From contig NC_088857.1 of NCBI RefSeq assembly GCF_963853765.1, positions 8,804,001 through 8,868,000 on the forward strand: a stretch of DNA of 64,000 bases, in the 5' to 3' direction. The position numbers were made by a program, and so were the translations under genes. The notes beneath the pieces are model-generated. The model saw only the letters and a program-made list of their open reading frames with translations, ran no database searches and was not told the DNA's origin. This document shows, one piece after another, positions 33,401 through 61,456 of this stretch; the first letter of the stretch is position 1, and each line of letters opens with the position of its first letter. The stretch is from Magallana gigas. Taxonomy: Eukaryota.

Positions 33401-36400
33401 GTATTTGGTTTGATGCTATTTTGATCTGAACAGTCTGCTTTTGTTATTCTCAGTACTTCCTATCAATAAGTAACTACCAGTGCGGTGTATATCACTCCAC
33501 ATAACTGACACTATATAGGGCAGCCGATGATTGATCGATCTATCCACGTCAACAAAAGAGGGCAATTATTGTTCAAAAATTATTGTTGTGATATTTTTAC
33601 ATTTCTTTCTTTCTATCTATCATTCTTTCTTTCTATCCTTCCTTCCTTTTTCTCTATTTTGAAACATCATCAAACCTATCCCCTCCACCCCCCCCCCAAA
33701 AAAAAAAGATGATTAAAATGTCTAAATCTTTTGATAAGTCTTAACAAAAGAAAAGAAATTCTCATTGGTTTAGACTTGACTCCTGTTTTTGTTCCAGTTA
33801 GATATTCTGACTTACTTCGACAAGAAACAAATGGCTACCTGTCAAAACCAAAACAGTCAAAAAAGAAACTTGCACAATTTGTTCTTCCCTTTTTTTGTAC
33901 AACGATTTCTGATAAGTATAACATATATTTATGTGTGACATTTCAAAGATAATCCTGCATGAATTTTATTTGTCTCTATCCATTTTACAAAAGTTTTATA
34001 AATTAAATTACCATACTTTTATACTTAAACTGCCTTTGACTTGTCGAATAAACTTTAATATATGCTTCGTGGATTAAGTTTATCATAAATAACAGTCAGG
34101 GAAATTTCATTAAAATCTTTTATTCATCACCGACCGCCATTACAATATCTTAATTGTCCAAATAGACATTTATTTTCTTTTAAACAAGACGTTTCTGTAT
34201 ATTAGAGCGATTCAGGTCATTTAAGATGTTCTTCTCACATAACATTCACGTTGCGAAAGGTACTGCGTTTAACAGCATTTCAATTTTCATAGACAATACC
34301 ATACATGCTTACTTTTGTTATTTTGTCTAACAATCTTTAAATGAGAGAATTTATGGTAACCTATCATAATTAAGATTAAGAAAAGTTACTACCCAAAGAT
34401 ATATTGAATATAACAGTTTTTTTCATCCAATTAACTGCAAATGCAGTGTAAGTATAAATCCTTAAGTTTGTATTGCATGTATGTAATAAAGTATTACAAC
34501 AGCCTTTGCCTCTAGAAAGTGTACACCTTTCAAATGTCCATGTATCATTTCGGTGACCTATTTAGCAGTTCTAAAACATTAATTCTAATTTTCATTTTTT
34601 ATATAAATTCTCTGTTCCCATCCATTTATCTGAAATACCGTTTAAAACATATATTGTAAGCGTTTTAAAAACACATTCAGTGTAAATACAATTACATAAC
34701 AAATTTAACAGTCAAACATTATAATGATTTGTCAATTATGACCTGAAATTTTTTTCTTGTACAGTGTATTTGGATTTCACACACACTCCGAATTGAATCT
34801 TTTTCCTCAGTCAAATGGTGAGGAAAGAATTATAGTAACATCTATAAATATAGATATTTTGCAAATACATCAAGTAATCATCATATATCATAACAATCGC
34901 ATCATAACACCTCACTACAATGTCACTCAGAGGGGACGATAGTTGGTATTTAGTGAGTCCGGCTGAATTATCGCCTTCAAAATAGAACTGAATACAAATC
35001 GAAGAATCTTGTGTCACCGAGAAAAATACGACTCGTAGACACCGTGAATGACTTAATTTTCCCTTGCAATGTTTCGTTTCCACAACAACAAATATACAAA
35101 GAGAACAACAACAGCAAATAAATAAAAACAACCAATCAATATATTTAAACATTTGAAGTACTGATTCGAATCTTTTATAAACATTTTGAGTGTATTTGTT
35201 TAAAAGATACAGTGTATGGTATATATCAATTTCAGTTGTATTAAACTTCAACCAATTTACAAATGCTGAAACGTACGGTTTCTGCTTTCATGTCATTTTG
35301 CCAACATTAATTTGCGCTTCTCTACAAGCCAATCCTATATTCTCGGAATGCTTTACTTGCTGAATGTAATTTAATGAATTTAATTCATAAATATATATGA
35401 GTAGATTGGACGAACGCGTCTTCATCAAAACACCAACAGGGTCCGCAGAATCAACATAACAAAACATTAGTGTCAACTCAAAACTGTAAATAACAATTAA
35501 AATTTAAACAACGATAAACAACATACAGTATTTCCCTCCGATATTCTCATCACCGTATTGCAACCGTGTAAGATATATAAGTAATCATAAGAAGTTTAAA
35601 ATTAAATTCTTGATGGTTTTCCATGCTGACCATACAATTGTGCAATATCAGAGATGATAAATGATGACGTCATCAATGTCCATAAGATTCACATCATGCA
35701 CATTTAACTTGCCGAAAAAATTCCATTTGCTGACTGCTTTTCATTCTCATTAACGAAATTAATAAAATCTGATTCGTGCAGTTTGCGGTCATAAAGCAAA
35801 GCTCAAAGCTGTCTTCAAAGACATTTTCTTCTACCTGAGTTACATCACACAAACCACGTTTTAGCACATGCGCTGTATGTGTCAGATGAAAAAAATTAAA
35901 TCTTTAAAGATGACTCAACTGCAAAAAAGAAGAAAATAACCTAATCTAATTTTCATTTTTTATTAATTTTTCACAAGTTTTTTTTATTTCATTTGATTGA
36001 TTTATTTGCGCTAGAATCCGCGGAGACGCATATCAATTAAAATCAATTAACTTGACAATTTTATTTATGATTCTTTCGACATTGTATATAAATCAAACAG
36101 TTTTATATCTACATCAGGCGCATAGTTGTTACAGTGTTATAATAACAGCCTTATGCATACTCTGACACAACAACATATTACTGAAAACATAAGAAAACCT
36201 TGATATAGAAGCGCAAGTTCCGTCATCCCTTGATAATTTGTCTTGTAGTTTGAATCTGCTGTTTCACTCGCCGATTGTCTTATGAATTGTAATAGGTATA
36301 ACGTAGGCCCTGTCTGATTAATAAAACCCCGGGCGGCCCATCGCGGCTCATCAGATCTCGCGCTCCCTCCGCTTGTCGCATTGCTTTAGGTGTTTGCCCT

Positions 36401-38885
36401 TGTGAGAGCTGGGTCATGGTGTTCGCTTCTTATTTTTCTTCCTAAAGTGGATTTATCATTTTTTGATATATATTTTTTCTCAATATACGTAAGTATGTTT
36501 CAATGTTTCCCTTTTTAAAGGAGATTTTATTGAATTATGAATAATACCTTGTAAAGTTTTCAAACTATATTACATTGATGATGTCCTATTCTAAAATTTT
36601 TTTTTTTTTTTTTGACTTTTGTTTCGTTTTGGTTTTTTTTTTTTGTTGAAAATTAATGTTTTTACCTTTAGGTGACAAATTAAAAAATGTTTTGAAATGA
36701 GTCGTAAAACTATTTAATTTTTTTAAATTCTGATTGATATTCGACACACATGTATAGATATTAAAGGTGTACTGGTGTAAAATTGATGTTTAATTGTTTG
36801 GCATAGCATTGAAAAGTCAAAAGTAAACGACAAAGTGTGTTGTCTTGCATGGTATACTAGTAATTATTTTCTTTTGATCTTACAACTTACAGTTTAAGTA
36901 TGCGTGTCGAATAAAATAACCAACCACCACTTTATTGGTTAACATTTGCTGTAATTAACTACTATCTTTGGTAATTAATGAATTAATTATTGGATCGGTA
37001 ACCACAGATCTTATATTTTTGACCGTGGCAATAACGCTTCCTAATTTCTATAACTGACGAATCCCACTTTGTTAGGGTTTTGTCTCGTAACACATTGCGT
37101 GAGAAGAATTACAAAAGTTTTCCCGCACTAATTACTCTTTTTGAAATTAGTAAGATACAAATAAAGATACATATTGATACAGGTTTTGATATATTATTAA
37201 GGTCGTACCCTCCGTTGTCTGAAGATTATAAATGTGTCTTATTTCCTGGAGAAATCGTCGTAAGATGCTAATGCAGGCTAATTGAATCAGAAAATATCTG
37301 TGAGAATGATCGATATCATCAGCGTTTTTAAACATTATCGTTACCACAACGGTGTTATAATCGTATCGAAATTACAACGTTTCCCATTTATGATATGACA
37401 TACATTGCATACAGTGTTGTTAAACAATGTAAAGCGACACAAAAACGTTTTTAAAACTTAAATCCTGATCGAAAATCAGAAACTTTGAAATATTACATCC
37501 CTATTTGGTATAAGTTCTGCAGATAAAATCATATACAATGTATAGCGACATATATTTTTGTTCGTTCTTGTGCTACATCAGTAATAAGTCTATACATGGT
37601 TTTGTCGCGGTTGGTGAACGGCATGTATACCTGCGGTTTCCATGTTCTTTCATTATCGATACAATCAATCATATAAACGTTATCAATAATCGATTGTCAA
37701 AAAAAACCAGAACTCAATTTTATCACAATCACAAAGTTTCTGTATGAATGAATATTTATTTCGACCTCATCTATAGTCATAAAAAGGTTCTTTAAGGACG
37801 ATTTTTAATTCATTCTTTCAACTTTAATTAAAATCTATGGAATTCCGATCTCTCCACACTTTTTAAGTGTGTTTTAATCAAGAGCGTTCTTGCGTTCAAT
37901 TGATAGGACATTCATTAAAAAATATGACTATTATATTCGTTTTGGATAAGATTCTGACATTCTTTTTCGCTTTTGCACTCGACCCGTTTGCCGTGATGAT
38001 ATAATGGGGTCATTTTTGGTTTGACGCACATATTCCTATTGTTATGTTTGGGAAAAGTTAAATATCGAAGCGAAGGCAGCAGTGCATTCTACCTATGACA
38101 TTGTCGATTTCTTGATGTACGTTGGTCAGCGGCGTCAACTATTTTGTGACATTTTCGCGCCACCAACGCCTTACACCTGGTAAATAAGTGAGCAAATATA
38201 TGATGTATTTGATTGATTCGGTAGAGAAATATGCCTATTTATTTACGATCAAGCGACAATAATGCCTTTCCTCTCCCTTCATAAATCTACAAAGTCATTC
38301 AGAATTCCTGTACAACTTCTAAACATTGTATAAACGTTTTTCAATTATCAACCAATTCAACAATTGAACAATATATAGTATTATCATTTTACGAATTTAT
38401 CTAACTAACGAGGCATGAATATGTGAGAGAGAGGAATTATCAAACATAATTATGCTCTGCAATCATATGCACCCTAATGCTCTAAAGTATTACGAATTAC
38501 AAACTATCCAACTTCCGCAACTCCTAAAATCTTTCTTAAATTCCTATTGATTATATAATGGGAAAAGAACTCAAGCTAGAGATATTTTGTGCCAGATGTT
38601 GCTTTACTTGCGCGAAATACACGTGATACTAGAGTGCACCAATCCCCTTTTGATATTTAAATGAATAAAGTCACCTTGACACTTTCCTGCCAATCAGTTT
38701 TGACTTTTGGCCTCTAATTTCCATTTTGTCACATCAAAAAAAAAAAATACATAAAAAATCGTAATCAATTTATTTCATTCGCTTCTTCCCATTGCAACTT
38801 GCCACAACTTATTTCAAAAACTCCCATTGATGAAAGGTATTTTAGAAATCAACTTGTTTTTCTTATTGCAGATTTAAAGGAAAAG

Positions 38886-41800
38886 ATGGACTTACATACA
38901 AGTCTTCCATTTGTTAGCATAATCTTCATGCTGTGCTGTGGTTTTGTCCATTGTGACACCGAGGATGCAACTGAAAATGTTGAATCTGTGATGACACATG
39001 CGCCAATTGTTTCGGACTCTCCGGTTGGACAATATCAAACAACAGTTGGCGGTGGTGAATATACAGACTATCAGGAGGATGATAATATGTATCTCTTTGG
39101 AGATTATTTTAACAAACAAGATATGGACGACAATCAAAACGCTGCACAAGCAGACGACAGATCAGCCACTCAGTCTTTCAATGTCGCTGATTCTCACACA
39201 ATTTCAAATAACGTAGTGCAAGTTACAGAATCTCCTGACTTTATCGAAGATTCAGAAGAAGCAGATGACCTAGGGGCTTATGACAAGGACTACGGTACTG
39301 AAGCGACTCAAATGGAGGCAAACGAAGGAAGTCGCGTGGCTGAAGGGGCTCAGTCAGATAGCGCCGGAGGAGATAGCACAGAGACCAGTGGTAGCGGGTC
39401 TTCGTCTTCTTCTGGAGAAACCAAACAATTTGGCGGTGGTGATAGTAATAATGGTAATTCCAAAAATAGCGATAGCAAGAGTTCAAGCGAAAATTCTGGT
39501 AGTTCCTCAAGTGGAACAGACGACAATGGATCAGGAGGGAATGGTAAGGATGATGGAAATGATATCGTAGATGTAGAGACCTATCATAACCTTCAGGGTT
39601 TAGCATCGTCTGAGGACAGTTCTTATTCCGACGAAAGTTCCGGAGAAAGCGGTACGAAGAAGAAAAATTGTAAATGTAAGAAAAATAAAAATGGTAAAGG
39701 AGGCGATTTTGGAAGTGATGATAGTAGTGATGACAGTAGTGAAGATCAGAGTAGCAGCAGTGGATCGGGAAGCGGAAATAGAGACAAAGATAAGTCGAGG
39801 GAAGGTAACTATGGAGACCAAGGAGACTCGAGCAGTGACGAGAGTAATTACGACTCGTACGACAGTGAGGATCACGAAAGCAGCAGCGAGAGTAGGGAAC
39901 AACCGGACAAACCGGATATCCCTGACTATGATAAACAACGAACCGGCAACGGTCTAGATAGAAGTAAGAGACGAGTCTAATCTGATCTTCTTTTTACCTT
40001 TGAAAATTGTCTGATTATTGGTAATCAAATAGAATTTGATGTATGAAATATATTTGATCAACAGACAAAACAGTCAGCTATGATATCTAAAAATACATAT
40101 AGAATTGACTATGCGTGGTGTAGGGATTATGAATGTGAATGACGATGTTATTTATCATTTATGATAATATATTTAGGATGGTTTGCATGTAAAATATACA
40201 CATGGTTAAAGCTTTGGAATGTTCTTTCCTTATTGCATGGGTCTCTCTTTCAGATCGTAATGAATACACCACTTCAATTCACCGATTCTTTACTAGCAAA
40301 ACCAACACCCTTTTCAATGTTGTGAACAAATTAACTTCGAATACTCCGAACACCCCTTCTAGTCCCGGAGGAGGCGATGTTAGTCTACGGACAAACTATC
40401 GACTGTCTTATCAACCAAAATCTACTCCATCTACAACAACTGCAAAATCATATATCATTAATTTAACGACTACGCCCCCACCACTCGGCGGGGACCCGCC
40501 TAACGTAAAGGATATAACAGATCAGAGTGTTCCAAAATGGTTTAGAGACTACATACCGAAACGGGAGTATGTTGAGCAGCCAATTGCTCGCGATTACATC
40601 CTCACTCCCAGAACCTCGTTCTGGGAGCCACCTGATGTCGCTAAGCCCCCTGATTGGCAGGAACAGAAAGAGTGGATCAATATCAAAATTAACCTCGAGA
40701 AACCAGCCGATTGGATAGATGATCCAAACTCAAACGGAAGCATTCCTCATTGGAACATTCCTTATATTCCCCCTGATTGGTTTAAAAAGAATAACGAGAA
40801 ACTGACCACTGAATTTCATTTTGAGCTGACAACACCCAGTCCAAAAACGGTGCGTTGGACACCAAAACCAGAGGGTGTTGACAGAACTACCCACGTCCCA
40901 GAGTATCTTGCAAAGAAACGAGGTAAACTAATTTAAATAATCTCAGTAGGCTTTCAAACATTTATATTGCAGGAAGACGTTTCATTCGATCGCTAACCAG
41001 AAAGACCCGATGTCGAATAAAAAATGCAGTTGGTAATTGCATGAGGGCATGACTCAAACTGCATGAAGTTGAATGATTTTGCATTTCTTTTATTTGAATG
41101 CTTTGTTTGAGGGTATATAGTGATTTTCTGAAAATATTTTTTTGTTTTACGGTATAAAGAAAATGGAGATATTTGGATTCTCCTCTCGATTCTAAAAAAC
41201 TTTCAGACTTAGAAAAGCTAAATGATACTTTTTTTGCTTGTAGTAGAAATGAACTTGTTTTACAAACATTAAAAAGTTGATAGTGTTTAATGATTTTCTT
41301 TGGTTTTATAAGTCAGGTTTATAGACATGACCATATTTACTTGCGCATGCGCGCTCTTGTAGAAAAGCGTTAAATGATGTTCCAATAAATAGGAAACCAG
41401 AAATTACAGTTCAATTAAAAGTTTACAACAGCTATCAATTCTTGTATGCCTGTCATTTGACGGCGCGGCATTTAATTGATCGTGTAAAATGAAATATGCA
41501 AAAGTCTTCAATTTTAGTTCAATAACATCAAAAAGATATAACTGTCAATTACATAGAAAGGGTTAAGTGCAAAGAATGTTTTCCATAATGTTTCCTTTAG
41601 TTATGAAGATAATGTATGCAATGTTTACAATGTATTATCCATTAAAAAATAATTTTCGGTAGAAACTAATAAATAAACCTGCTTTGTTTACAGTTTGTGA
41701 CAGGACATTTGACATCGTGTTGGCAATAGATGGCACCGGGAACGAAAAGGACTTTGGGTACCTAAAGGGGGCCATAGTTCAGCTCTTGGATCGTTTAATC

Positions 41801-44800
41801 ATGGGGGAAGATAAGGTCAAGGTCGGAGTCGTGTTGCTTGGTAACACTGATGGATTGCAGATTCCCATTAGTGGAAATCGGGTAGAATTAGAAGATCAAG
41901 TTGCAAGATTAGGGTTACCCGAGGACAGCAACAGATATGATATTGGTATGTTATACTCACCAACAGATATGATTTTTGGCATTTTATATTCACCATTTCT
42001 TTAAATGTATTTCTTTGTATAGGTTTATTATTATCTTAATTATAAAGTTGCGTACCTTTTTGTATTTGACGCTTATTTTGTCTATTGAAATGGTCCCCTT
42101 TTAATTTATGTTATAAAAAAATGTTGTGGTCACCGTAATGATTCGTTTTTCTTACAGCACTGAAGTCAGCGGGTGAACTCCTTGAAAGGGAAGGAAGAGA
42201 AGGGATTCCGAAAGTCGCCATAATGATTGTGAATGGAAAATCCAGATACCAGTATCACACCCGAATGGAGGCTGCGCGTCTCCATAGAAGTGGAATCTCC
42301 GTCTTTACTGTCGGCGTCGGATACAACACCGATGAAGAAGAACTAAAGACGATTTCTTCAAGTCAAAACGAGGTTATCCGGGTCAAAAACTATATTCACC
42401 TGGTGTATCTAATGACTGGGTACGTGCAACTGTTCTGTAACGTAGAAGATAATTACCTTACTCCGCCAACACTCGCTCCACCACACCAAACGGCCACACC
42501 CAAAGCCAAAATAATCGCCAAGTTAACCACGGACGTCATGTCAGAGCCAAGTCCAAGAGAAGCTAAAGGTACCGCTTTCATTTATTTTCTGTTTTTCATG
42601 TCTTATTTACTTTTCTTTCTGGCGAAGCTTAATATATTTATCAGATTTGACTAGATATTTGTTTGTTTCTGCAGTTCTTTGTGAGGGTTGCAAAATGATA
42701 AATGGAGCCGGATTCAACAGTCATCCCAATGAATGCGACTTATTCGTCCATTGCTATTTCGGAGAACTAGGACTTCGAGCAATCATCAGGAAATGCCCGT
42801 TTGGACAGTTCTGGAATCAGACGATATTATCCTGTGAATACTCTGAAAGAGCTTATTGTCCAATGGGTAAGTACAATTTGCATTTGTTAAAACTCTGTGG
42901 CAACAAGCGTTTAGAATTCATTTTCTGAATACTTTGATTTTGTTTTTTATAGATCGCTGTGCTTACATAAAAGACCGGGATTATGAAGCCTCAGAAAACT
43001 GTCGCGCATACTGGGAGTGTTCGAATGGTCATTCTAGAGGGAAGTGTTGTAGGTATGGATACCGCTACGTCAGAGGAGAAGGGTGCGCCCTGGACAGCGA
43101 CAACATTTGCAAAGAAAGCTGTCCGATGGAAATGCCTACGGATCTTCATTCGTATAACAATGGTAAATGTTTGGAGTTGAATGACCATGTTTCGAATGAA
43201 AGCATTTTAATACAAAATATTCGCAAAATTATCAATATCTGTTAACTTATTTTAAAATAGCTCCAGCCCAATCTTGTGATAAAATTCCAATCGCCAATGA
43301 TAGGAGCCACTACCAGCAGTTACTTCCGGGAACAGGGTATGTGACAATGCCATGCGCAGAGGGTACCCACTATAATGAGAGAAAGTGCACATGTACCGAC
43401 CAGGAGCCAAGTTATCCAACATTTAAGGAGCCACTTGTGCAAGAACCACCAGCTGGTAAGATAATTGATAATCATTAATTTAGTGTATCGCATAAACAAT
43501 GGAATACTAGTACTAGTATACACAATTTTAGATTATACTTGTTTGTATCAATTTTGATGGGTATTAAAAATTTTAAAATTGTTGATATTTCCTTTCGACA
43601 GGTTGTCGACCAGAAGTAAAATTAGACTTTAAAAATGGTGTCACTGATTCTTCCGGTAAATGGACCTATGTAAACAACCAAGGAGTTTTGATACAGAATG
43701 GAGAGGCGATATTCAACGGAGACAGTCGCTTACTGATTCCTAGATTCACAAATGTTGAATTTGGTAAAACATTTGTGATTCGCCTTCGGTATAAGGAAGA
43801 AGAAAAGTTGAAATTCAACGAGTCCCAGGCATTAGTTAACAATGGTGACTGTGGTGATTTTGGGTCCATACAGATTTTCACGAAAAGAAATTCTATTGGC
43901 TATGTCGTGAAAACTACGAAAGAACCTAGCCATGTTTCATTACAAATTCATAAACCAGTAAGTATTTAGAAAAAACAGTTATTGAATATATGCTGTCCCT
44001 TTTTTATTCTTTATGGGGATTTCATGCTAATGAGTTTCCTTCTCTGTTTCAGCACGGGGAGTGGAAAGATGTGGAATATGTAGTCTCTGACGGAAAGTTT
44101 GAAGGTTACTTAAATGGAGTTCAGGCAACAAAATGGTCAATGGGTATGTCATCTGTTCACGTGTACCCTTCCTAGCTATTTTGATAGGTTGACCTTGTAA
44201 AATCATGATTTTTCTGACAAATAGTATGTTCATGTATGTTTCTAACATTGCAGGATCTGTAGAATCAAGGCAGTGTGCCGTACAAATAGGATTTGGACAC
44301 GGCTATAACAATTTTAGAGGTCGTTTATCTTTGGTAGGTATAATCTGTATATTGGAGTCTTTTAATATTTATATATCTTTACAAAAAGTACTTGATAATT
44401 AAATCTTAATTGTTTTCAAGATGAAGAATATGTTAGGATATTGTTTATGCGGTTTGAAATTACAAAAATTAATGCAAAATACTGCATTATTCATAAGCGC
44501 ATTAAAATACCACACAGGTATAGTTTATTCATCAAAGACATACATGTATTGCCACTTCAATTTCCTTTCGTCTGTTTCTGTCCAATTGTGGCTGTTGTAT
44601 AGCCAAACACCGAAATATTTGTCTTTGTAGTATATAGACACGACAAACACTGTGTTATGACTGGAATTGACAACACTGTCAATCAAAATTGGTAGTTTGG
44701 CGCGTAGTTTTCCGTAAAACCAATCAACCGTAACAATCGATAAATAGAAGTCTTGTGTTTTATGTTGGTCATACACATAAATGGACACAAGCAGTATTAA

Positions 44801-45054
44801 AACAAACATAAATAACATCGTAGGTGAAATTGTCATTAAAGACGCATTCGTCATAAAATTCCGCCCAACGTTTTGTTGATCAATAATTTATCACCCATAC
44901 ATGTATGTAATGTATAATACATGTAGTTAATGAATTTTAAATATTACGGTACCACACACCTGGATGTTAATAAAATATAATAGTGAAACATTTTTTTTCT
45001 TTACAGCTTGAAATTTATCTCTGTAAACCAGAGAAAGCTATGAAGTATTCTTGA
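38886..45054 (+). CDS. Pif/BMSP-like shell-matrix protein, ~1193 aa: signal peptide, Asp/Ser/Gly-rich region, Thr/Pro/Trp-rich region, VWA, 2-3 chitin-binding (CBM14-like) modules, LamG/ConA-like domain
   Basis: Exons 38886-39963, 40254-40922, 41694-41945, 42158-42568, 42675-42866, 42953-43162, 43261-43455, 43602-43957, 44053-44143, 44254-44333, 45007-45054 (3582 nt, in phase). VWA: FDIVLAIDGTG..KVKVGVVL..IPKVAIMIVNGKS..ISVFTVGVG. CBM14: HPNECDLFVHC..RKCPFGQFWNQTILSC. LamG-like: AIFNGDSRLLIPRF..CAVQIGFGHGYNNFRG. AATAAA at 45217-45222. The join of exon 1 to exon 2 is the least certain part. Confidence 0.85.
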
Positions 45055-48000
45055 TAGACTCTCCATCCACTATGACGAGAAATCCACACTAGGAGGAAAA
45101 GGCACCTATCTACACTGAGCATGCGCAGACCATCATACATCAATCACGGGGCGCCTTTATTCAAAGTGCATCAGGATATTCTGATCGTCACGAAATCCTA
45201 CTCACTTTGATCAAGAAATAAACTGAGCTTTGTCATTTCTATTTACTCCAAAAGCAGCTGTTTCCTTGCATTCATTTGTACAGTGTGTGTATATATACCT
45301 CATATATGTTGAAAATTACAACTTTCCGTTATGTGTCATAACAGTTATTACGGATAATCATGATTTGACTGAAGATATGGATGAACATACGTTTAAATGA
45401 CGGACAAACCAGACTCCAGCAAAATAGAAGAGCTACGTAATACAGTGCTGGTCCATTCCTGTTTTCTCTGCAACTGTTCATGATTATGTCTGACATTACT
45501 AACTTTATACTTCATTGTGATAGTTTGAATATGAAATATTATTAATAATATACAAAGTATTTGTTTCGAGAAAACTGTTTCCTTTACTTGTCTCATGTGT
45601 TGTATTAAACTATATGATACTCTCTATTTTTCTGTATGACTTTAATGCGCAATTAAATCTGTATCAGTCCTGTACAGTGTAGGCACTTTTTACACGGTAC
45701 CCCCTCGATCCTGATTTAAAATAAAACCGTTTACAAACAGTCCATATTTGCTTAAATAGATATGTTTAACAACTACGATATTCGCATAATGAATTAAGTA
45801 AGATAAAAATTAGGTTTCTTTAAATCATGTAGCTGTTACATGCACCATCTTTCCTAGTATGTATAATGTTTATTAAATACTTGCTCGTCAAGTAAAAGAA
45901 TATCAATGAAATCGTGCCATTATCAAAACTACATTAGCATGATTCATATGTACATTATAAGAGAGAAATGCAACGTTTTTTAAAATCAATTTTCAAAGAA
46001 AACCTAAAGTAAAAAAAAAAGTAATGACACGTTACATGACGTCAACAGATAGTCAACAAATGTATTTTAAAAATAGACGAATAAGAAACTTATAAACAAC
46101 TTAACTGTCCATAAAAACATTTCAATTATTTTTGTAAATCTTGTTTTAATTAAGTTGCTTATTTTGGGAAGTAAATACAGACTGTAATACTGCGCAGTAA
46201 AAATTATTTTGTTTGCAACAAATGCGTTAAATTTTATTTTATCAAATTGATCTTTATTTTGGAACCACATTTTCTCAAATATTTCAATATTTCAAGTATA
46301 TCAAACCTTTATTGAGGGAACTTAACATCACAGCACATAGACTTAGCATTCATTTTTAAATTAATTTTCGCAAAAGGTATTAACCTTTAGTACTGATTTT
46401 CAATTTACTAACGTCAAAATGTTAAATTTAGAACGCACCTTAATTCAACCAAAAGAAAAAGACAAATTAACATCAACCTCAATTTCAAAAATCCGTACAA
46501 CCGGCTAAACTGAAACGTCATTAGTACAAGAACTTCACCAAAGTGTGCCTTGGGTTCACAAATCAAAAAGACCACAACCGCATCTTGTTATTAACATATA
46601 TATGTATATTTATAATCCTCTCCTTTTGAAAAAAAAATTAATTATCTTCTGTGTGAATTTCATACTTATTTTCAAATATATTCAAAAGTTCTCAATAGTC
46701 TTGTAGACCTGTCAAGAAATATTCAAAATATCTGAGACATCAAACTGAAAAACAGAATCTACAATTTGTGTACATTGTTGTTGAGTAAATCTTAACGCTG
46801 TCTTCATTAAAAGTGAAATTAAGGTAAACGGTTTTTGGAAACATATCTTATGTTGCTGGTACGTCATGAAAAACCGGTTGTGTCTCTCCGAGGACATAGG
46901 TACATGTAGCACTCAGTGACTGCTGTGAAATGAAGTTGAGAGTTCTTTTTGGGTTTTTTTTTTTGTTTTTGGCACATTCATATCAAGGCTTTGCTCAAAT
47001 GAAAACAATTTTCCAAAAAGAAGCCAAATTCTCAATTGAAATTCGCAGTTTTAGCATACTGCAGTACATGTACCTTATTGGGAAAATTTAACAGAAATCG
47101 CCTATTTACAAAAAAAATAACAAAAAGGACCCATTGAATTTTCTCTTTGTCGGAGGATTAATGTTCCTAAAAATAGTAAAAATAATTTAGGTTACAGAGG
47201 CTGGGACGGGGGGGGGGGGGGGGGGTAGCGTGTTTATTTTTAATATCGTTATACATGTAATATTGCTCTACTGTAAAAGAAAACATTTCGCACAGAGATC
47301 AATGTTGGCGTCTTAAATAGCACCGAATGTCAAATGAACGGAGTCCATACAATTTTGCAAAGTACAATGATTTTGGAAGAAGTTGAGCCGATTCCTGCAA
47401 AAGTTCTCCCCAGCCATTCTACCTAATGAGAACGACAAAGTTTAACCTTCCTTAAACCTGAATAAATCACTGTCCTGGTGAAGCAATCATTTGTCTTCTA
47501 CCTGTGTTTTGTTATATTTTTACATATGTTCTCCAAATCTTGTGTCATGTTTGTGCATCTTGCTCTTCAAAACTTGACACTTTTATTTGCATTTCATTTG
47601 CAGGATGTTAAGGGGTTTGTACTGGTTTCTTTCTGCTGAAAAACTCATCAAGAAGAGTGTTTCAAATTAATTAACACATATTTTGAATTCAACAATTTTA
47701 ATATTGAGCAGATTATTAAACCACATGAAATGCGTTAGATTTGTGTGTGCTATGTAAACAGCTTAAATTAGCATTAAAATGCAATACGCCCATAAAGTTA
47801 CATAACATTTGTATTAAAAACTCCAACATTAAACAAAATAAATTGACATGAAAAGCAACACTACAAATAAAAATCAACCTGAAAAAGATATGAATATTCT
47901 AACAGACTTTAAAAACCTTATGAAAAAAATGCCCCATATCTTAAAATTTCAAAATGACTCAATACAAAAATTACTTGCATAAAAATCATCTACAGCTTCT

Positions 48001-49562: not shown

Positions 49563-52500
49563 TTACTCAACTTTTACCCTATTGTCAATTCGAACAACGA
49601 TCATTGCAAAACCAAGTAATATACACAAGTCATCAATGATAATCCGCACTTGATTCCAGAATAGCATTCTGTTGCCTTCTACCCAGTAGTTGATGTCACA
49701 GTCAATGAGGATTGTCAGGATTCCAAACATCACGATCACCGAGATGGACATGTCTCTCAGAAAGTGGCCCGAGAAAAAACTAATGGCACCGGCCGCCAAG
49801 ACGAGGGTGAAGAAATACCTACTCCAGTCACCGCCCGGGACATGGTACAAAAAGGCTTTCTTGTCCTCTACACTGTCGTTGAGAATATACACAAACGCCA
49901 TCAGAAATAGTCCTATGACGGTTTCTCCAAGCTTTTGCAATTGTTTTGATGGCAAGTTTTCAAAAATGGATGAGAAAAGGAGAAAAATACCAATACAGCC
50001 AATGTGACGAGATGCCATCCTAATCTGGGGACAAAAAGGAAACAGTTTCAGAAGTCAGACAGATAAAAACAAAAATTTAGAATACTACGTATTAAAAACT
50101 AAAAATTTTAACTTAATTTTCCTACACATGTATGAAGAGAGATAATTCAGGGACATGGAAAAGTCTTTACATTTTTTAGACTGACTAGTGTGGAATTTTT
50201 ACTGATATTATATAAATGAACTTGTGGACAAATACAGCAGTTGACTGGTATTAAGGACTACAGATTATTTATTTAACTTGAAAATGAATATAGCACTGGG
50301 GCCAAAAAAAGAACAAAGTCTAGCTTTCATTGATTCTTAGTCTTGCTTTTTCTCCTGTATATACTCCTTTTTTGTTAAAATGTGACTGAAATTTCAAGAG
50401 AGACTTTGTCCAAGTTTTATGACCTTTTACTGGGTGTGTGTCTAAAGCTGAAGATTAATTCAAGTAAAACAAATGTGTTCTTGAATCAAAGAAAAACAAA
50501 TACTGCAGCACATGCAACAACCTAGTTTTCTTTTACAGCTTCCTTTTGTTTTAAACTGTTGACAATTTCTTCCTAGTCATCAAATCAAAGATCATGATGA
50601 ACAAATAGGTGGGAAGGAAATTCTCAACTTTAAACAAAAAATTAAAATGATTATTTTTTATTGTATTGGTTTTACATCATCTTTGCTAGCCAAGGGTGAC
50701 AATTCACTGTGTTTCTCTATTCAATGAATATGAACAGAGAAACACTATGGATTGTCACCCTTGGCTATATAAGATGAGCAAAACAAACCATTTTAAAACT
50801 TGAATTACACCAAACCCTACTGGTTTAATTCTGCAATGCCAACTTTCACACAGCCATTGTTACAAAATAAGAGAAAAGCTTACTACCTTTCCGACACTGA
50901 ATAATAATAAACAATTTAATTCAAAATTTTATATATTATATAATTTTTAATTTATTTATTACTATATCATCAGTTCTCCAGATGGAGACCAACCCTCTCA
51001 CCTTTTGCCATTGGGTGTAGTCCATCTGTGTGTTAGTAAACAGGGTATACACCAGGTACAGCATTTGTCCGCAGTATACCAGTGAAACCTCCTTGCATTT
51101 GTAGCGGAAAGACAACAGAAATCCACAGACAACAAAAATCCCGATGTGTGTGTAGATTACTTTGGGTTGAATTGGTGGGTAACTGTGAGTGAATAAAAAA
51201 TCACAATAAACAGATGCCAACAACACGCAACATGTATACATGAAAACACAACACAAAATATTTTTGTAAAGACATATATTTAATATATTTCTTCACAATT
51301 AAAGCATTTAAAATGCACATCATTCAATGCCTGATACACCCATGAAACTCATAGAACTTTTTTAAACTGACTACATAACATATGCAATTGATCATTTTCA
51401 TGTACTGATTAATACATGTAAATATCAAACTATAGCACACCAGCTGTGCACAGTTAATTAAACATGTAACAGTGTATATCAAAATATATTTTACTTTTTA
51501 CAAGCATGTTTATAACAAAAATTTAAATAGACAAAAAACTTAGCAGCTCAGGAAAATGAAGCCTAACTACTAGGTTATCTGCACATGGCAAAATATTTCA
51601 TTTCTTTCTTACTTCAGTTAGGAATATGATAAAACATCAATGCACTTGCAGAGATCATGTAGATTGGAATTCTGGGAGGAAATTAAGCTATAAAACTGGT
51701 CAGTTTTTGGGTCAAACTGCACACTGTCAGTCTGGCAACTGACTTTTGGTATCAGCTGTAGCTATTGTAAGAATTCCACATACAAATATAAGTTTATATT
51801 GAATGCAGTGGTTTGCCACAAGCCTGTGACAAGGGAATTCAGAGGGATATTTATACAAAGTTACAATGAAAGAGAGCATCTAGAGTTGTATTATCTTATT
51901 CTTATAAATAAAGAAAAATCTGTGTGCTATCATAAATAGTGAACTCTTTATAATTACAGGGAACAAAAAATTATAGTCAGTCCAAAGATATGAATGCAGC
52001 AGAATTTGACAATTTTTAATAAAAAATAAAACATACCTGTGAAAGAAGTGCAATTGAAATAGATGAAAGGGGAAAATATCAAAGAAAATTTTATTCACAC
52101 ATTATCGTTTATCAATTGGAAAAATTCACAAGAATAGAAACTGATTTCTTATGGAGATTTATAATGGGGAATGTTGACATCTTTTCTCCATTTGCCGTGG
52201 GCCTTATGTGGGACTTGTTTTAGTATTAGCGCTCGGAATATCTCACATAATATTTCAATGTTATAATCCATGTCATATGTCCAGGTCTGTTGCAATACAT
52301 AATCCCAGTAGACATCACATTTTTAGCCATGTATTGAAACCTGATTATAAGCTAGAGGGGGCATTTCAAAGGAAAAATCTTGTTTTGGAAACTATATTTA
52401 TTCAAAAAGATTATGCATTTCCTCTCTAAATAATAATATTCCACTAGCCGACTTGCTTAGCTTTTTATAGCTTATCTTGTCAGAATATTTACGTTATGTT

Positions 52501-55070: not shown

Positions 55071-56237
55071 GGCGCCTAGTTTATTACTTGGCACTCAGTA
55101 CCTGTCTTGTATTATCTTGGCACGGTACCATTGACATTGACAGAGATCAGACGGTCCTTTGACTATCTTGATGTAAATAAAGATGGGAGAATATCAGTTC
55201 AAGAGGTTGTACGAGGGACACAAATCCATGGCTTAAATCCCACAAGCATGGAAGCCGACGAAATGATTGCAGAGATGGACATTAGCGGTATGTCAATTTA
55301 CAAAATACAATCTCCATTTTCTTGGTGTAGTTGCCCGGCAATGATAGCACTTATCTCCTGATAATATAAGATTTTGTTTCCACATGCGCAAATATTTACA
55401 TGTACATGTATACGGAAATGGGATTTATTGCAAACCTTTTAAAACAAAAAATGGAAAACCAATGTTGCTTATTTAAAAAAAATGCAAAATATATTCCTAA
55501 TTTAAGCAGAAAAATAAAGAAAATGCACAGACTGTTCCGGTGGTCTTTAACACTCGCCAGATAAAATTTCGAAAACTAAATTTTCTGCACACTCTATGTA
55601 CAGGGAATGGCTACGTGGAGTTTGAAGAGTACGAAAAGTTTATGAAAAAAGAACTCAAGAAAATGGACTATGAGCAAAAACTGCTGTTAGATGCTTTTAA
55701 GAAATTTGACAAAGATGACAATGGCTACGTATCGTTTGAGGAGCTAAAGAAAGCCCTCTGCGGCAAGGGGGATCGTATGTCTGACGAGGACGTCAAGTAT
55801 TTCTTTGAGGAAGCTGATGCCAACAAAGACGGCAAANNNNNNNNNNNNNNNNNNNNNNNNNNNNNNNNNNNNNNNNNNNNNNNNNNNNNNNNNNNNNNNN
55901 NNNNNNNNNNNNNNNNNNNNNNNNNNNNNNNNNNNNNNNNNNNNNNNNNNNNNNNNNNNNNNNNNNNNNNNNNNNNNNNNNNNNNNNNNNNNNNNNNNNN
56001 NNNNNNNNNNNNNNNNNNNNNNNNNNNNNNNNNNNNNNNNNNNNNNNNNNNNNNNNNNNNNNNNNNNNNNNNNNNNNNNNNNNNNNNNNNNNNNNNNNNN
56101 NNNNNNNNNNNNNNNNNNNNNNGGACTGACGGATGGACCGACCAACTTATAGATATATAGTATATATGTATATACATGTATACATAGGAAGCTGATGCCA
56201 ACAAAGACGGCAAAATAGATTTTAAAGGTACAAATTA

Positions 56238-59322: not shown

Positions 59323-60227
59323 ATGTCAACAATTTCAAAGAAGGAAAAAGAAGCATTAGGTAAGAATGAAATTACTCTCTCCTTTGAAGTTTGATGAAAA
59401 CATACCTTAAAATATGTACTAGTATATTTATGTTTGTTAAAAACTATATCACATAATCAAGACTTCGTTTCCATTCATTGTTCGCCGTATTTGTTGACAG
59501 AAATAAAAGAGTCCTTTGATTTCATTGACGAGGACAAGGATGGTTTGATACAAGTGGAGGACATTGTTCGTGGGATACATATCCTGGGTTTAAAGCCCAC
59601 TAGCAAGGAGGTCGATAAGATAATTGCGGACCTAAATGCCTTAGGTATTTCATTATAATACAATACACAGTCACACTATTGTACTTATAAACCAAATACC
59701 AATAGTCTAAACGACTTTTTTTTTTAAATAAACGAGATCTAGTTATCATAATGAGTTTTCTTGTATTCTATTATTTTTCTACTTTTGTTCGAAAACAAAT
59801 GTAATCATGAAAGATTGGATACCACTTTAGATTGCAATTTAGTAAAGCACTATATCATGTTAGTTTTTGTATATCTTAACAGTTCTGCAACTACATGTAC
59901 ATGCAACTATTCTTATAATATTTTCTCTTACATGGCCTTATTATTTCCTTATTAAATTCTTTTTGCATTAGAAAAGCAATCTATGGACTTTGGCACTTAT
60001 GAGCAGTTCATGAAAAAGAAACTTAAAGAGGTGAACTATGAACATAATCTGTTTAAGAAGTCATTCAAGAAATTTGATAAGGACGGCGATGGCTTCGTCA
60101 CTTTTGAGGAGCTGAAGAGTGGCCTCAAAGGTATGGGAACCCGTATGTCTGATGGAGAGGTTCAACGTTATTTTGAAGAAGCTGATATCGATAAAGATGG
60201 CAAGATAGACTATGACGGTATGTGTAT

Positions 60228-60281
<54 letters not shown>

Positions 60282-61456
60282 GGACGGACAAACGAACAAA
60301 TTGATAGATGATTTACTTGACTCAAGCCTTTCTCACTCCCTTGTGGAGCATAGGCCACAGACAATTCTTCTCCACTTCTCTCTGTCCTTTGCTAGTTGGT
60401 GGATGGTGTTCCATTTGTGTCCTTTCTCGGCCATTTCTTTTTCAAGGACTCTTCTCCAGGTTAGTCTTGGCATTCACCTTTTCCTCTTCCCTTGTGGTGT
60501 CCATTGGAGGGCTTGACAGGTGATGTTAGATCTGCCTTTCCTTAGTGTATGACCAATCCATTTCCATTTTCTCTTTTTAATTTCTTGTGGAATAGGGATT
60601 TGGTTAGTAGTTCTCCAAAGGTCTTCATTAGTTATTTTGTTCGGCCACCATATCTGAAGGATGTTACTCAGACATCTGTTTGCAAAGGATTGGAGTTTTT
60701 TCCTGTTCGCCATTGTGGGGCCTCATGTTTCCGACCCGTAAAGTAGCACTAATTTTACGTTGCTATTAAATATCCTGAGTTTGGTCTTGATTGTTATGTA
60801 CTTGGACTTCCATACTTTTCTTAGCATACCAAATGCAGTATATGCCTTTGCTAGGCGTGATTTTACATCTTCCTCTGTTCCTCCACTATGGTTAACAACA
60901 CTTCCTAGATGTGTGAATGATGTAACATTTTCCAATTGAGTGTTATCAATTTCTATGCTGTTGATGTTGTTTTTTCTCATTAGCTTTGTTTTTTCCTTGT
61001 TGATTCGGAGCCCAGTCTTTGATGCATTTTTGACTAAGATTGATGTTTTCTCTTGCATTTGGTCGTACGTATGGGATAAAAGAGCCAAGTCATCGGCAAA
61101 ATCTAGGTCTTCAAGTTCGTTCATAAGGTTCCACTGGATTCCATTTCTTTTCCCTGCTGTTGTTTCTCTCATAATCCAGTCAATGGCCAAAAGGAACAAA
61201 AAGGGGGAGAGCAAGCAACCTTGTCGTACACCTGTTTTGATTTCAAATTCTGCACTTGTATCTCCTCCATGTATGACCTGGCATTTATAGATTGATAGAT
61301 ACTGTATGATAATTTTTTTTCACTCATCTTGTCAGCGTATTACATTTGAAATGTTTTGTACGAAACAAACTACACAATTCATGTATAGTTCTTTATTAAA
61401 TGATAATAAGTATTGTTTTCATTTCAGAATTTGTGAAATGGTTTTCAAATATGTAG
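59323..61456 (+). CDS. Calmodulin-like protein 2, 151 aa, EF2 degenerate; tandem paralogue
   Basis: Exons 59323-59359, 59501-59644, 59972-60217, 61428-61456 (37/144/246/29 nt, same sizes as paralogue 1). Loops [48 protein letters not shown]. Ends EFVKWFSNM* vs EFVIWFTTM*. Confidence 0.9.
60231..60281. repeat. (GATA)n microsatellite, ~12 units
   Basis: Direct reading; same intron position as 56238-56289. Confidence 0.95.
60310..61290 (-). mobile_element. 5'-truncated RTE-clade non-LTR retrotransposon (RT C-terminal part), 981 bp
   Basis: [57 protein letters not shown]. Two in-frame TGA stops (60725-60723, 60476-60474) and no frameshift between the two ORF pieces. TSD ATTGATAGAT at 60300-60309 and 61291-61300. 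Confidence 0.92.

What the first reader, a model, noticed from the sequence alone, without database searches (positions are those of the whole stretch)
38886..45054. Pif-like protein with the acidic domain at the N-terminus (inverted layout) and a dibasic site just before VWA
Established: pearl-oyster Pif is a precursor of VWA plus chitin-binding Pif97 followed by Asp-rich Pif80, split at a dibasic site; Pif/BMSP relatives share VWA-CBM14-LamG. Seen here: signal peptide, then ~340 aa of Asp/Ser/Gly/Glu-rich sequence, then ~220 aa Thr/Pro/Trp-rich, then LAKKR|V (40913-40922) immediately before VWA. There is no C-terminal acidic tail. Inference: an independently assembled bipartite precursor releasing an acidic mineral-binding chain and a chitin-anchored scaffold chain.
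Basis: partly seen in the sequence, partly recalled or inferred. Interest (0 to 1): 0.75.

Follow-up and report, generated by a model that had tools for sequence, protein, structure and literature searches.

The report
Known oyster shell protein PifS1
This is the Pacific oyster's already published shell-matrix gene PifS1 (CGI_10028014): the acidic front half joined to a VWA, chitin-binding and LamG-like back half is real and made as one transcript, but the layout is already described and the proposed cut between the halves has no evidence.

Summary
Eleven coding exons (38886-45054, + strand) give a 1193-aa protein. It is 100% identical to RefSeq XP_011422884.3, an "uncharacterized protein" of Magallana gigas.

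RNA contigs from three independent studies join exon 1 to exon 2 at 39963|40254. One contig runs through exons 1-4. The "separate exon-1 transcript" refuter therefore fails.

The layout is confirmed:
- signal peptide
- 337-aa acidic Ser/Asp/Gly part (pI about 4, net charge -52)
- 222-aa Pro/Thr/Trp part
- KKR|VC
- VWA
- CBM14 plus two weak CBM14-like exons
- uninterrupted LamG-like end

It is not new. Low-complexity strings published for CgiPifS1 (CGI_10028014) match exons 1-2 almost exactly. Shimizu et al. 2024 define the PifS1 subfamily by this long insertion between signal peptide and VWA. CGI_10028014 is a known adult-shell protein.

The cleavage idea remains untested and is weak:
- KKR lacks the P4 Arg of Pif's RMKR.
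- Val-Cys follows it.
- Tribasic runs occur at chance frequency.
- The 100 residues before it are as conserved as the VWA domain.

What I add: the exon-2 module was found only in oysters and is single-copy in this genome.

The scan's notes held nothing similar.

The parts
36359..36488 (+). 5' untranslated exon. The 3' end at 36488 is exact; the 5' end is approximate.
   Evidence: RNA contigs carry 123-130 extra letters before 38872. The last 30 of these match 36459-36488 uniquely. GTAAGT follows at 36489.
38872..39963 (+). First coding exon: ATG at 38886, signal peptide (38886-38954), then the 337-aa acidic Ser/Asp/Gly/Glu-rich part. It ends in phase 1.
   Evidence: RNA contigs start at 38872 and join 39963 to 40254.
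40254..40922 (+). Pro/Thr/Trp-rich exon (residues 360-583, phase 1-1). Its last ~100 residues are highly conserved among oysters.
   Evidence: Only oyster relatives were found among 1.84 billion representatives. It is single-copy in the genome.
40913..40921 (+). Lys-Lys-Arg (K580-R582) at the very end of exon 2. This is the proposed processing site, directly before V583-C584.
   Evidence: It reads KKR or RKR in all oyster orthologues seen. It is not an R-X-[KR]-R site.
41694..42568 (+). VWA domain, encoded by two exons (41694-41945 and 42158-42568) plus a Pro/Thr linker.
   Evidence: Pfam VWA E = 3.7e-18 on P0007, the 99%-identical allele. Both junctions are seen in RNA.
42675..42866 (+). CBM14 (peritrophin-A) chitin-binding domain exon.
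   Evidence: Pfam CBM_14 E = 2.3e-7 and 4.9e-7.
42953..43455 (+). Two Cys-rich CBM14-like exons (42953-43162 and 43261-43455).
   Evidence: Sub-threshold CBM_14 matches, E = 0.04 and 0.019. Junctions are seen in RNA.
43602..45054 (+). LamG/ConA-like C-terminal domain in four exons (43602-43957, 44053-44143, 44254-44333, 45007-45054 including the stop). There is no low-complexity insert.
   Evidence: Pfam is silent. Language-model features point to Laminin_G_3 clusters at 0.96. The AF2 model is all-beta (pLDDT 51). All listed Foldseek hits are ConA-like jelly rolls, TMq 0.36-0.66.

Best explanation
This is the Magallana (Crassostrea) gigas PifS1 gene, known as CGI_10028014 and RefSeq XP_011422884. 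It is transcribed as one mRNA: one 5' untranslated exon plus 11 coding exons. The product is a 132-kDa secreted shell-matrix protein.

Shown here:
- the gene model
- the single transcript
- the domain order
- conservation of the whole layout in Crassostrea and Saccostrea

Taken from the literature: the protein is present in the adult shell.

Inferred mechanism:
- The C-terminal half is the family's scaffold. CBM14 binds chitin, VWA binds other matrix proteins, and the LamG-like domain binds carbohydrate or Ca.
- The N-terminal half is a disordered polyanion with many Ser-x-Glu/Asp motifs that could be phosphorylated. It binds Ca2+ or calcite.
- My default is that both halves act in one chain, tethering mineral-binding charge to the chitin framework. 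This is the job that Pif does with two chains held together through VWA.
- A cut after KKR is possible, but I judge it less likely than not.
For: Identity:
- My model equals P0009 = XP_011422884.3.
- The five zone-1 low-complexity strings printed for CgiPifS1/CGI_10028014 match exons 1-2 with 0-2 allelic differences each.

One transcript:
- The junction 39963|40254 appears in contigs of three studies.
- X8 record 15 spans exons 1-4, and X4 record 8 spans 39431-40922.

Domains.

Acidic character is conserved while sequence is not:
- 36% identity to Saccostrea, yet pI 4.05 and net charge -51 to -57 in all five sequences.
- 12 SxE and 9 SxD motifs.

Shell presence and expression:
- CGI_10028014 is listed as an adult-shell and "conserved" shell-matrix protein (PMC11291548, PMC7747718, PMC5379566).

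Single-chain default: no R-X-[KR]-R site, P4 Ala, P1' Val, and a P2' Cys that probably clamps the VWA domain.
Against: - No experiment shows whether the mature protein is intact. Pif and BMSP set a family precedent for cleavage.
- The basic triplet sits exactly at the exon and module boundary. It is kept as KKR or RKR in every oyster sequence seen.
- Mineral binding by the acidic part is inferred from composition only.
- The link to CNI_013832 rests on mass, pI and best-hit annotation, not on a sequence I could read.
Confidence: 0.6

Rival explanations
1. A proprotein-convertase or Kex2-like protease cuts the precursor after K580-K581-R582. That releases a ~60-kDa N-terminal chain (acidic part plus Trp-rich part) and a ~69-kDa VWA-CBM14-LamG chain, mirroring Pif97/Pif80.
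For: - The basic triplet lies at the last codons of the lineage-specific exon, directly before the VWA Cys.
- It is kept as KKR or RKR in M. gigas, C. angulata, the C. virginica-like P0006, two Saccostrea species and the fragment P0001.
- Pif and BMSP are cleaved (PMC11291548).
- A Mytilus trossulus paralogue (P0008) also has a ~480-aa Asn/Asp/Ser-rich N-terminus. It ends in KKVRRRK five residues before its VWA Cys.
Against: - The site lacks the P4 Arg of RMKR, and there is no R-X-[KR]-R in the protein.
- P1' is Val and P2' is a Cys.
- Basic runs occur at chance frequency.
- Flanking residues 481-582 are 77-85% identical to Saccostrea, like the VWA domain, so the triplet's conservation is not specific to it.
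- P0008 is not an orthologue: its best matches in this genome lie in the 17.6-Mb Pif cluster.
- No proteomic evidence was found.
Confidence: 0.2
2. The N-terminal half is not a mineral binder. It would instead be a solubilising or propeptide-like region that keeps the chitin/VWA scaffold from assembling before secretion. It might be trimmed elsewhere or degraded.
For: - The acidic part evolves fast: 22-57% identity per 40-residue bin against Saccostrea.
- 8 of the 13 differences from C. angulata fall in the first 360 residues, and there is a 1196-aa length variant.
- PifS1 members of Atrina and Pinctada have different N-terminal low-complexity strings. Atrina's are Gln-rich; Pinctada has one short acidic string and one Trp/Arg/Asn-rich string.
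Against: - Net charge and pI are tightly conserved across genera. That suggests selection on the polyanionic character typical of mineral-associated matrix proteins.
- There is no direct evidence for trimming.
Confidence: 0.12
3. Exon 1 is a separate gene or transcript ending at the stop at 39978-39980. It would encode only signal peptide plus the acidic protein.
For: - The open frame continues 5 codons past the donor to a stop.
- Intron-1-containing RNA contigs exist.
- Logan ORF calls of 431 aa cover this frame on genomic contigs.
Against: - Intron-retaining contigs have depths of 11.6 and 14.2, against 274 and 493 for the spliced form. That is about 3-4%, the level expected of pre-mRNA.
- Spliced contigs bridge exons 1-2 in three studies.
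- The RefSeq model is the spliced one.
- No pile-up of read ends was reported there (table 6).
Confidence: 0.03

Closest known systems
CgiPifS1 = CGI_10028014, PifS1 subfamily of the Pif/BMSP family (Shimizu et al. 2024, J Mol Evol, PMC11291548)
   Same: It is the same gene. The published zone-1 low-complexity strings match exons 1-2. The subfamily is defined by a long insertion between signal peptide and VWA, followed by CBM14 and partial LG. The protein is an adult-shell protein.
   Different: Nothing structural differs. The paper calls the zone-1 regions Ser-rich or Gln/Asn-rich. In the text I read, it does not discuss net acidity, a basic site before VWA, or processing of this protein.
Pinctada fucata Pif (Pif97 + Pif80; Suzuki et al. 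2009)
   Same: Signal peptide, VWA, CBM14 and CBM14-like domains, LamG-like sequences, and a charged low-complexity region. Both are shell-matrix proteins of the same family.
   Different: - In Pif the Asp/Lys/Arg-rich region lies inside the LG region, downstream of the CBM domains. Here the Ser/Asp/Gly-rich region lies upstream of VWA and the LG domain is uninterrupted.
- Pif is cut at RMKR (R at P4); here the site is AKKR.
- They belong to different subfamilies (Pifsf versus PifS1sf).
- Pif is a nacre protein, and oysters make no nacre.
Crassostrea nippona CNI_013832-RA ('Pif', probably Pif-d; Bai et al. 2023, BMC Biol, PMC10543319)
   Same: 132.2 kDa, acidic pI, signal peptide, best SwissProt hit Pif. 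[quoted passage not shown] It is drawn with repetitive low-complexity domains.
   Different: Orthology is inferred from mass, pI and annotation only. I could not read its sequence.
Mytilus BMSP and the Mytilus trossulus protein LOC134686483 (P0008)
   Same: Both have VWA, CBM14 and LG modules. P0008 also has a long Asn/Asp/Ser-rich N-terminus and a polybasic run just before VWA.
   Different: - BMSP has four tandem VWA domains and Gly-rich inserts in LG.
- P0008 carries additional acidic inserts between VWA and CBM14 and inside LG, plus a canonical RRKR site.
- P0008's closest oyster relatives are in another gene cluster.

Membership tests
Pif/BMSP family, PifS1 subfamily | Identity with the published member CGI_10028014 | tested here: met
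   The five low-complexity strings of Table S7 match the model with 0-2 differences each. The model equals RefSeq XP_011422884.3.
Pif/BMSP family, PifS1 subfamily | Long insertion with low-complexity regions between signal peptide and VWA (zone 1) | tested here: met
   559 residues lie between the signal peptide and V583.
Pif/BMSP family, PifS1 subfamily | VWA domain followed by CBM14 or CBM14-like domains | tested here: met
   Pfam VWA E = 3.7e-18 and CBM_14 E = 4.9e-7. Two weaker CBM14-like exons follow.
Pif/BMSP family, PifS1 subfamily | LamG / ConA-like (LG) sequence at the C-terminus | tested here: inconclusive
   There is no Pfam hit. Language-model features give Laminin_G_3 at 0.96. The AF2 model is low-confidence (pLDDT 51), and all its listed Foldseek hits are ConA-like jelly rolls. 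The evidence is consistent but not strong.
Pif/BMSP family, PifS1 subfamily | VWA domain groups in the PifS1 clade in a phylogeny | not tested
   Taken from PMC11291548. I could not retrieve the Pinctada and Atrina sequences.
Pif/BMSP family, PifS1 subfamily | Protein present in the shell matrix | not testable with these tools
   Literature only: adult-shell protein.
Pif sensu stricto (Pif97/Pif80-type precursor) | Charged low-complexity insert within the LG region, downstream of the chitin-binding domains | tested here: not met
   Residues 1003-1193 are a contiguous LG-like domain without low-complexity sequence.
Pif sensu stricto (Pif97/Pif80-type precursor) | R-X-K/R-R (RMKR-type) site separating the two chains | tested here: not met
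   No R-X-[KR]-R motif occurs anywhere in the 1193 residues.
Proprotein-convertase-processed precursor | Basic cleavage motif in an accessible linker | tested here: inconclusive
   A minimal dibasic K-R is present with P3 Lys, but P4 is Ala, P1' is Val and P2' is Cys. The AF2 model of residues 355-800 is too poor to judge exposure (pLDDT 36).
Proprotein-convertase-processed precursor | Demonstrated cleavage products | not testable with these tools
   None of the papers read reports on it.

The most novel reading that the evidence does not exclude
The oyster PifS1 precursor is really cut after KKR. An acidic, Trp-rich ~60-kDa chain and a chitin-anchored VWA-CBM14-LamG chain would then be made from one gene in the reverse order to Pif. 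This would be a second, independently evolved two-chain matrix precursor, in a calcitic shell without nacre. A further part of this reading is that the conserved, oyster-only block 481-582 is a new small domain. It would hold the two chains together or dock onto VWA.
Probability: 0.2. Interest if true: 0.5.

Novelty: already known. Interest (0 to 1): 0.22.

Why it matters
As it stands, this is a correct re-discovery from raw DNA of a published shell-matrix gene and of the feature that defines its subfamily. It adds no new kind of system.

Three modest points go beyond the literature I could read:
- RNA evidence that the acidic exon and the scaffold exons form one transcript.
- The strongly acidic version of the N-terminal insertion, and the Trp-rich module before VWA, were found only in oysters. 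Both are single-copy in this genome.
- A concrete, testable processing hypothesis.

If cleavage were shown, it would be a case of convergent two-chain organisation in biomineralisation proteins.

Tried and rejected
- Structure of residues 355-800 (exon 2 plus VWA) with a four-sequence alignment gave mean pLDDT 36. It is unusable for judging whether exon 2 folds or whether KKR is exposed. It is not evidence of disorder.
- The ESM Atlas gave no usable hit for residues 440-582. Pfam is silent on 470-582.
- A profile of the LG part against PDB sequences gave only E = 0.42.
- Two searches for more distant orthologues found only the oyster proteins or nothing. These used region 584-1193 of P0007 and an alignment of the VWA-to-LG halves. 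The tool needs shared 5-residue words and a length window, so this says little. I therefore could not check the basic site in the Pinctada (pfu_aug2.0_421.1_04155) and Atrina (Ape5232) PifS1 proteins.
- I first took the Mytilus protein P0008 for an orthologue, because it shares the N-terminal acidic part and a basic run before VWA. I rejected this: its best matches in this genome lie in the Pif/LamG3 cluster at 17.6 Mb of the same contig, not in this gene.
- Paper searches for the RefSeq accessions and LOC numbers found nothing.
- The hit of exon 2 to a WW-repeat protein (P0004, E = 2.5e-7 summed over 8 repeats) was not confirmed as a WW domain. There is no Pfam WW match, and the Trp-Trp spacing, counted by hand, is 26 rather than about 22 residues.
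- tblastn of the protein against the window found no second copy. There are only non-significant LG-like matches at 2571-3347.


Full report
**Observation**

Reading 38700-45300 and splicing at canonical GT..AG sites gives 11 coding exons:
- 38886-39963
- 40254-40922
- 41694-41945
- 42158-42568
- 42675-42866
- 42953-43162
- 43261-43455
- 43602-43957
- 44053-44143
- 44254-44333
- 45007-45054

Together they form a 3582-nt frame without internal stops, encoding 1193 aa. Exons 2-7 are all phase 1-1, the class typical of shuffled extracellular modules.

- A 23-residue hydrophobic signal sequence.
- 337 residues with S 19%, D 15%, G 12%, E 8% (pI 4.05, net charge -52).
- 222 residues with P 13%, T 12% and 8 Trp (pI 9.1).
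- K580-K581-R582 at 40913-40921, followed by V583 and C584.

Pfam finds VWA at 589-746 (E = 3.7e-18) and CBM_14 at 815-865 (E = 4.9e-7) on P0007, the 99%-identical allele of the same length. It also gives two sub-threshold CBM14-like matches in exons 6 and 7. It finds nothing in exons 1, 2 or 8-11.

**Is it one transcript?**

Yes. RNA-seq contigs from three different studies, plus stranded raw reads of a fourth run, were laid on 38700-44400.
- All nine introns in that stretch appear as GT..AG joints.
- The critical joint 39963|40254 is carried by contigs of depth 274, 133 and 493.
- X4 record 8 covers 39431-39963 plus 40254-40922. X8 record 15 runs from exon 1 through exon 4.
- Contigs retaining intron 1 have depths of 11.6 and 14.2, about 3-4% of the spliced form, as expected for pre-mRNA.
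- Raw reads lie on one strand only.
- Loose ends of 123-130 nt before 38872 match 36459-36488, which is followed by GTAAGT. This is an upstream 5' untranslated exon.
- Loose ends after 44333 read into exon 11.

**What it is**

The model is identical, residue for residue, to P0009. That is RefSeq XP_011422884.3 / XP_034338493.2, "uncharacterized protein [Magallana gigas]". It differs at 13 positions from XP_052680622.1 of Crassostrea angulata.

Table S7 of Shimizu et al. 2024 (PMC11291548) prints the low-complexity regions of "CgiPifS1, CGI_10028014, zone 1". Its five strings occur in exons 1-2 of this gene with zero to two differences each. Several of those differences coincide with variants seen in the laid RNA. 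The gene is therefore the published CgiPifS1.

That paper divides the Pif/BMSP family into eight subfamilies. [quoted passage not shown] It places their low-complexity regions "primarily" upstream of VWA.

CGI_10028014 is cited in several contexts:
- as an adult-shell matrix protein
- as one of the conserved VWA plus chitin-binding shell proteins
- as expressed in shell-forming larval stages and up-regulated at metamorphosis

In C. nippona, the shell protein CNI_013832-RA has these properties:
- mass 132.2 kDa and pI 4.67
- a signal peptide
- best hits "uncharacterized protein LOC105325156 [C. gigas]" and Pif

The oyster orthologues here have masses of 131.5-132.5 kDa. CNI_013832-RA is the "Pif" gene whose mantle expression that paper maps, and it is drawn with repetitive low-complexity domains. 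I regard it as the probable orthologue but could not read its sequence.

**Relatives and origin**

An exhaustive HMMER search of 1.84 billion representative proteins with exon 2 found only three true relatives:
- a 1190-aa Saccostrea cucullata protein in which the match lies at 371-578, the same layout
- two fragments

Full-length orthologues of 1190-1195 aa exist in two Saccostrea species and in a Crassostrea sequence (P0006) that clusters with a C. virginica fragment.

Identity to Saccostrea differs by region:

| Region | Identity to Saccostrea |
|---|---|
| Acidic part | 36% |
| Exon 2 | 62% |
| VWA to C-terminus | 75% |

The acidic part nevertheless keeps pI 4.05 and net charge -51 to -57 in all five sequences. 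Composition, not sequence, is under constraint, as expected of a disordered polyanion.

Within exon 2, conservation rises sharply at about residue 481. It then stays at 77-87% through the KKR site into VWA.

In this genome, exon 1 and exon 2 each match only themselves. The VWA-CBM14-LG half has many paralogues, including a cluster at 17.60-17.69 Mb of the same contig. This is presumably the Pif_LamG3 cluster of PMC10543319.

Published zone-1 strings of the Atrina and Pinctada PifS1 proteins are different. Atrina's are Gln-rich; Pinctada has one short acidic string and one Trp/Arg/Asn-rich string. The large Ser/Asp/Gly-rich version therefore looks like an oyster elaboration of an older N-terminal insertion.

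**The C-terminal domain**

Pfam does not recognise it. Three weaker lines of evidence point the same way:
- Language-model features place residues 1000-1193 with Laminin_G_3 clusters, score 0.96, 68 of 100 hits.
- A low-confidence AF2 model (pLDDT 51, pTM 0.59) is all-beta.
- All its listed Foldseek matches are ConA-like/LamG-type jelly rolls, TMq 0.36-0.66.

This agrees with the family's "LG" region. Here that region is uninterrupted, so there is indeed no acidic insert or tail.

**The cleavage hypothesis**

For:
- The basic triplet is encoded by the last codons of the lineage-specific exon.
- It lies directly before the Cys that opens the VWA module in this gene and its paralogues.
- It reads KKR or RKR in every oyster sequence seen.
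- Pif and BMSP are cleaved.
- A Mytilus trossulus paralogue has an analogous acidic N-terminus ending in KKVRRRK before its VWA.

Against:
- The site is A-K-K-R|V-C, without the P4 Arg of RMKR.
- The protein has no R-X-[KR]-R at all.
- Basic runs occur at chance frequency: 2 tribasic against 1.4 expected, and 10 doublets against 13.3 expected.
- The neighbouring 100 residues are equally conserved, so the triplet's conservation carries little weight.
- The Mytilus protein is not an orthologue.
- None of the papers read reports processing of this protein.

The structure prediction meant to show whether the site is exposed failed (pLDDT 36).

I put cleavage at about 0.2.

**Mechanism**

Most likely this is a secreted modular matrix protein.
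- The CBM14, VWA and LG half integrates into the chitin-protein framework.
- The N-terminal polyanion has 12 SxE and 9 SxD motifs that could be phosphorylated. It interacts with Ca2+ or calcite.
- By default the two halves act in one chain.

The gene structure, transcript and domains are shown here. Shell localisation comes from the literature. Mineral binding and the processing state are inferred.

**Verdict**

- The finding is already known as CgiPifS1 and as the PifS1 subfamily's defining layout.
- Residual novelty lies only in the untested processing idea and in the oyster-restricted Trp-rich module.
- The scan's own notes held nothing comparable.

Noticed in passing
window 39964-39980: If intron 1 is retained, the frame ends five codons later (..GLDRSKRRV*). 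The product would be only signal peptide plus the acidic part. Such RNA is present at about 3-4% of the spliced depth, which is most simply pre-mRNA.
   Followed up: partly
window 40616-40921 (residues 481-582): A Trp-rich block with repeated PPDW/PADW/IPHW motifs is as conserved between Crassostrea and Saccostrea as the VWA domain. It has no Pfam or Atlas match and no relative outside oysters. It shows a weak, unconfirmed resemblance to WW repeats (P0004). It may be an undescribed small domain.
   Followed up: partly
P0003 (public protein collection): This 161-aa 'relative' of exon 2 has Pro replaced by Phe/Leu and Thr by Ile throughout. That is the pattern expected from translating bisulfite-converted (C to T) oyster DNA, so it is an artefact in the protein collection, not a homologue.
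   Followed up: no
P0023 = XP_022339846.1 (Crassostrea virginica): The RefSeq protein named 'asparagine-rich protein-like' (268 aa) aligns only to the last 268 residues of the 1191-aa orthologue P0006. The C. virginica gene model appears truncated.
   Followed up: partly
window 38886-39963: Amino-acid polymorphism is concentrated in the acidic exon. Eight of the 13 differences from C. angulata, and six of the eight from the commonest Logan allele, lie in residues 1-360. A 1196-aa length variant also exists. The window allele has T587 where the other oyster sequences compared have K, apart from two Logan M. gigas alleles (41706 C>A).
   Followed up: partly
window 55107-56160 and 59434-60231 (+): Two tandem EF-hand (calmodulin-like) genes, each with two EF-hand-pair exons. 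The first is interrupted by a masked run of N at 55837-56122, which I left untouched.
   Followed up: partly
window 60474-61214 (-): A reverse-transcriptase fragment (RVT_1 plus DUF6451) of a non-LTR retroelement lies just after the second EF-hand gene.
   Followed up: no
window 49563-50018 (-): A 151-aa open frame matches the C-terminal half of TMEM101 (E = 7.7e-24). It is the downstream neighbour on the opposite strand.
   Followed up: no
window 15943-16182 (-): An exon encoding a ShK-like domain (Pfam ShK, E = 3.2e-6). It belongs to an unidentified upstream gene.
   Followed up: no
G000 contig C5, 8,674,120-8,677,938 (-) and 17.60-17.69 Mb: Paralogous CBM14/LG exons lie about 126 kb upstream of the window. 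A dense cluster of VWA/CBM14/LG genes lies 9 Mb away on the same contig. This probably corresponds to the published Pif_LamG3 cluster.
   Followed up: no
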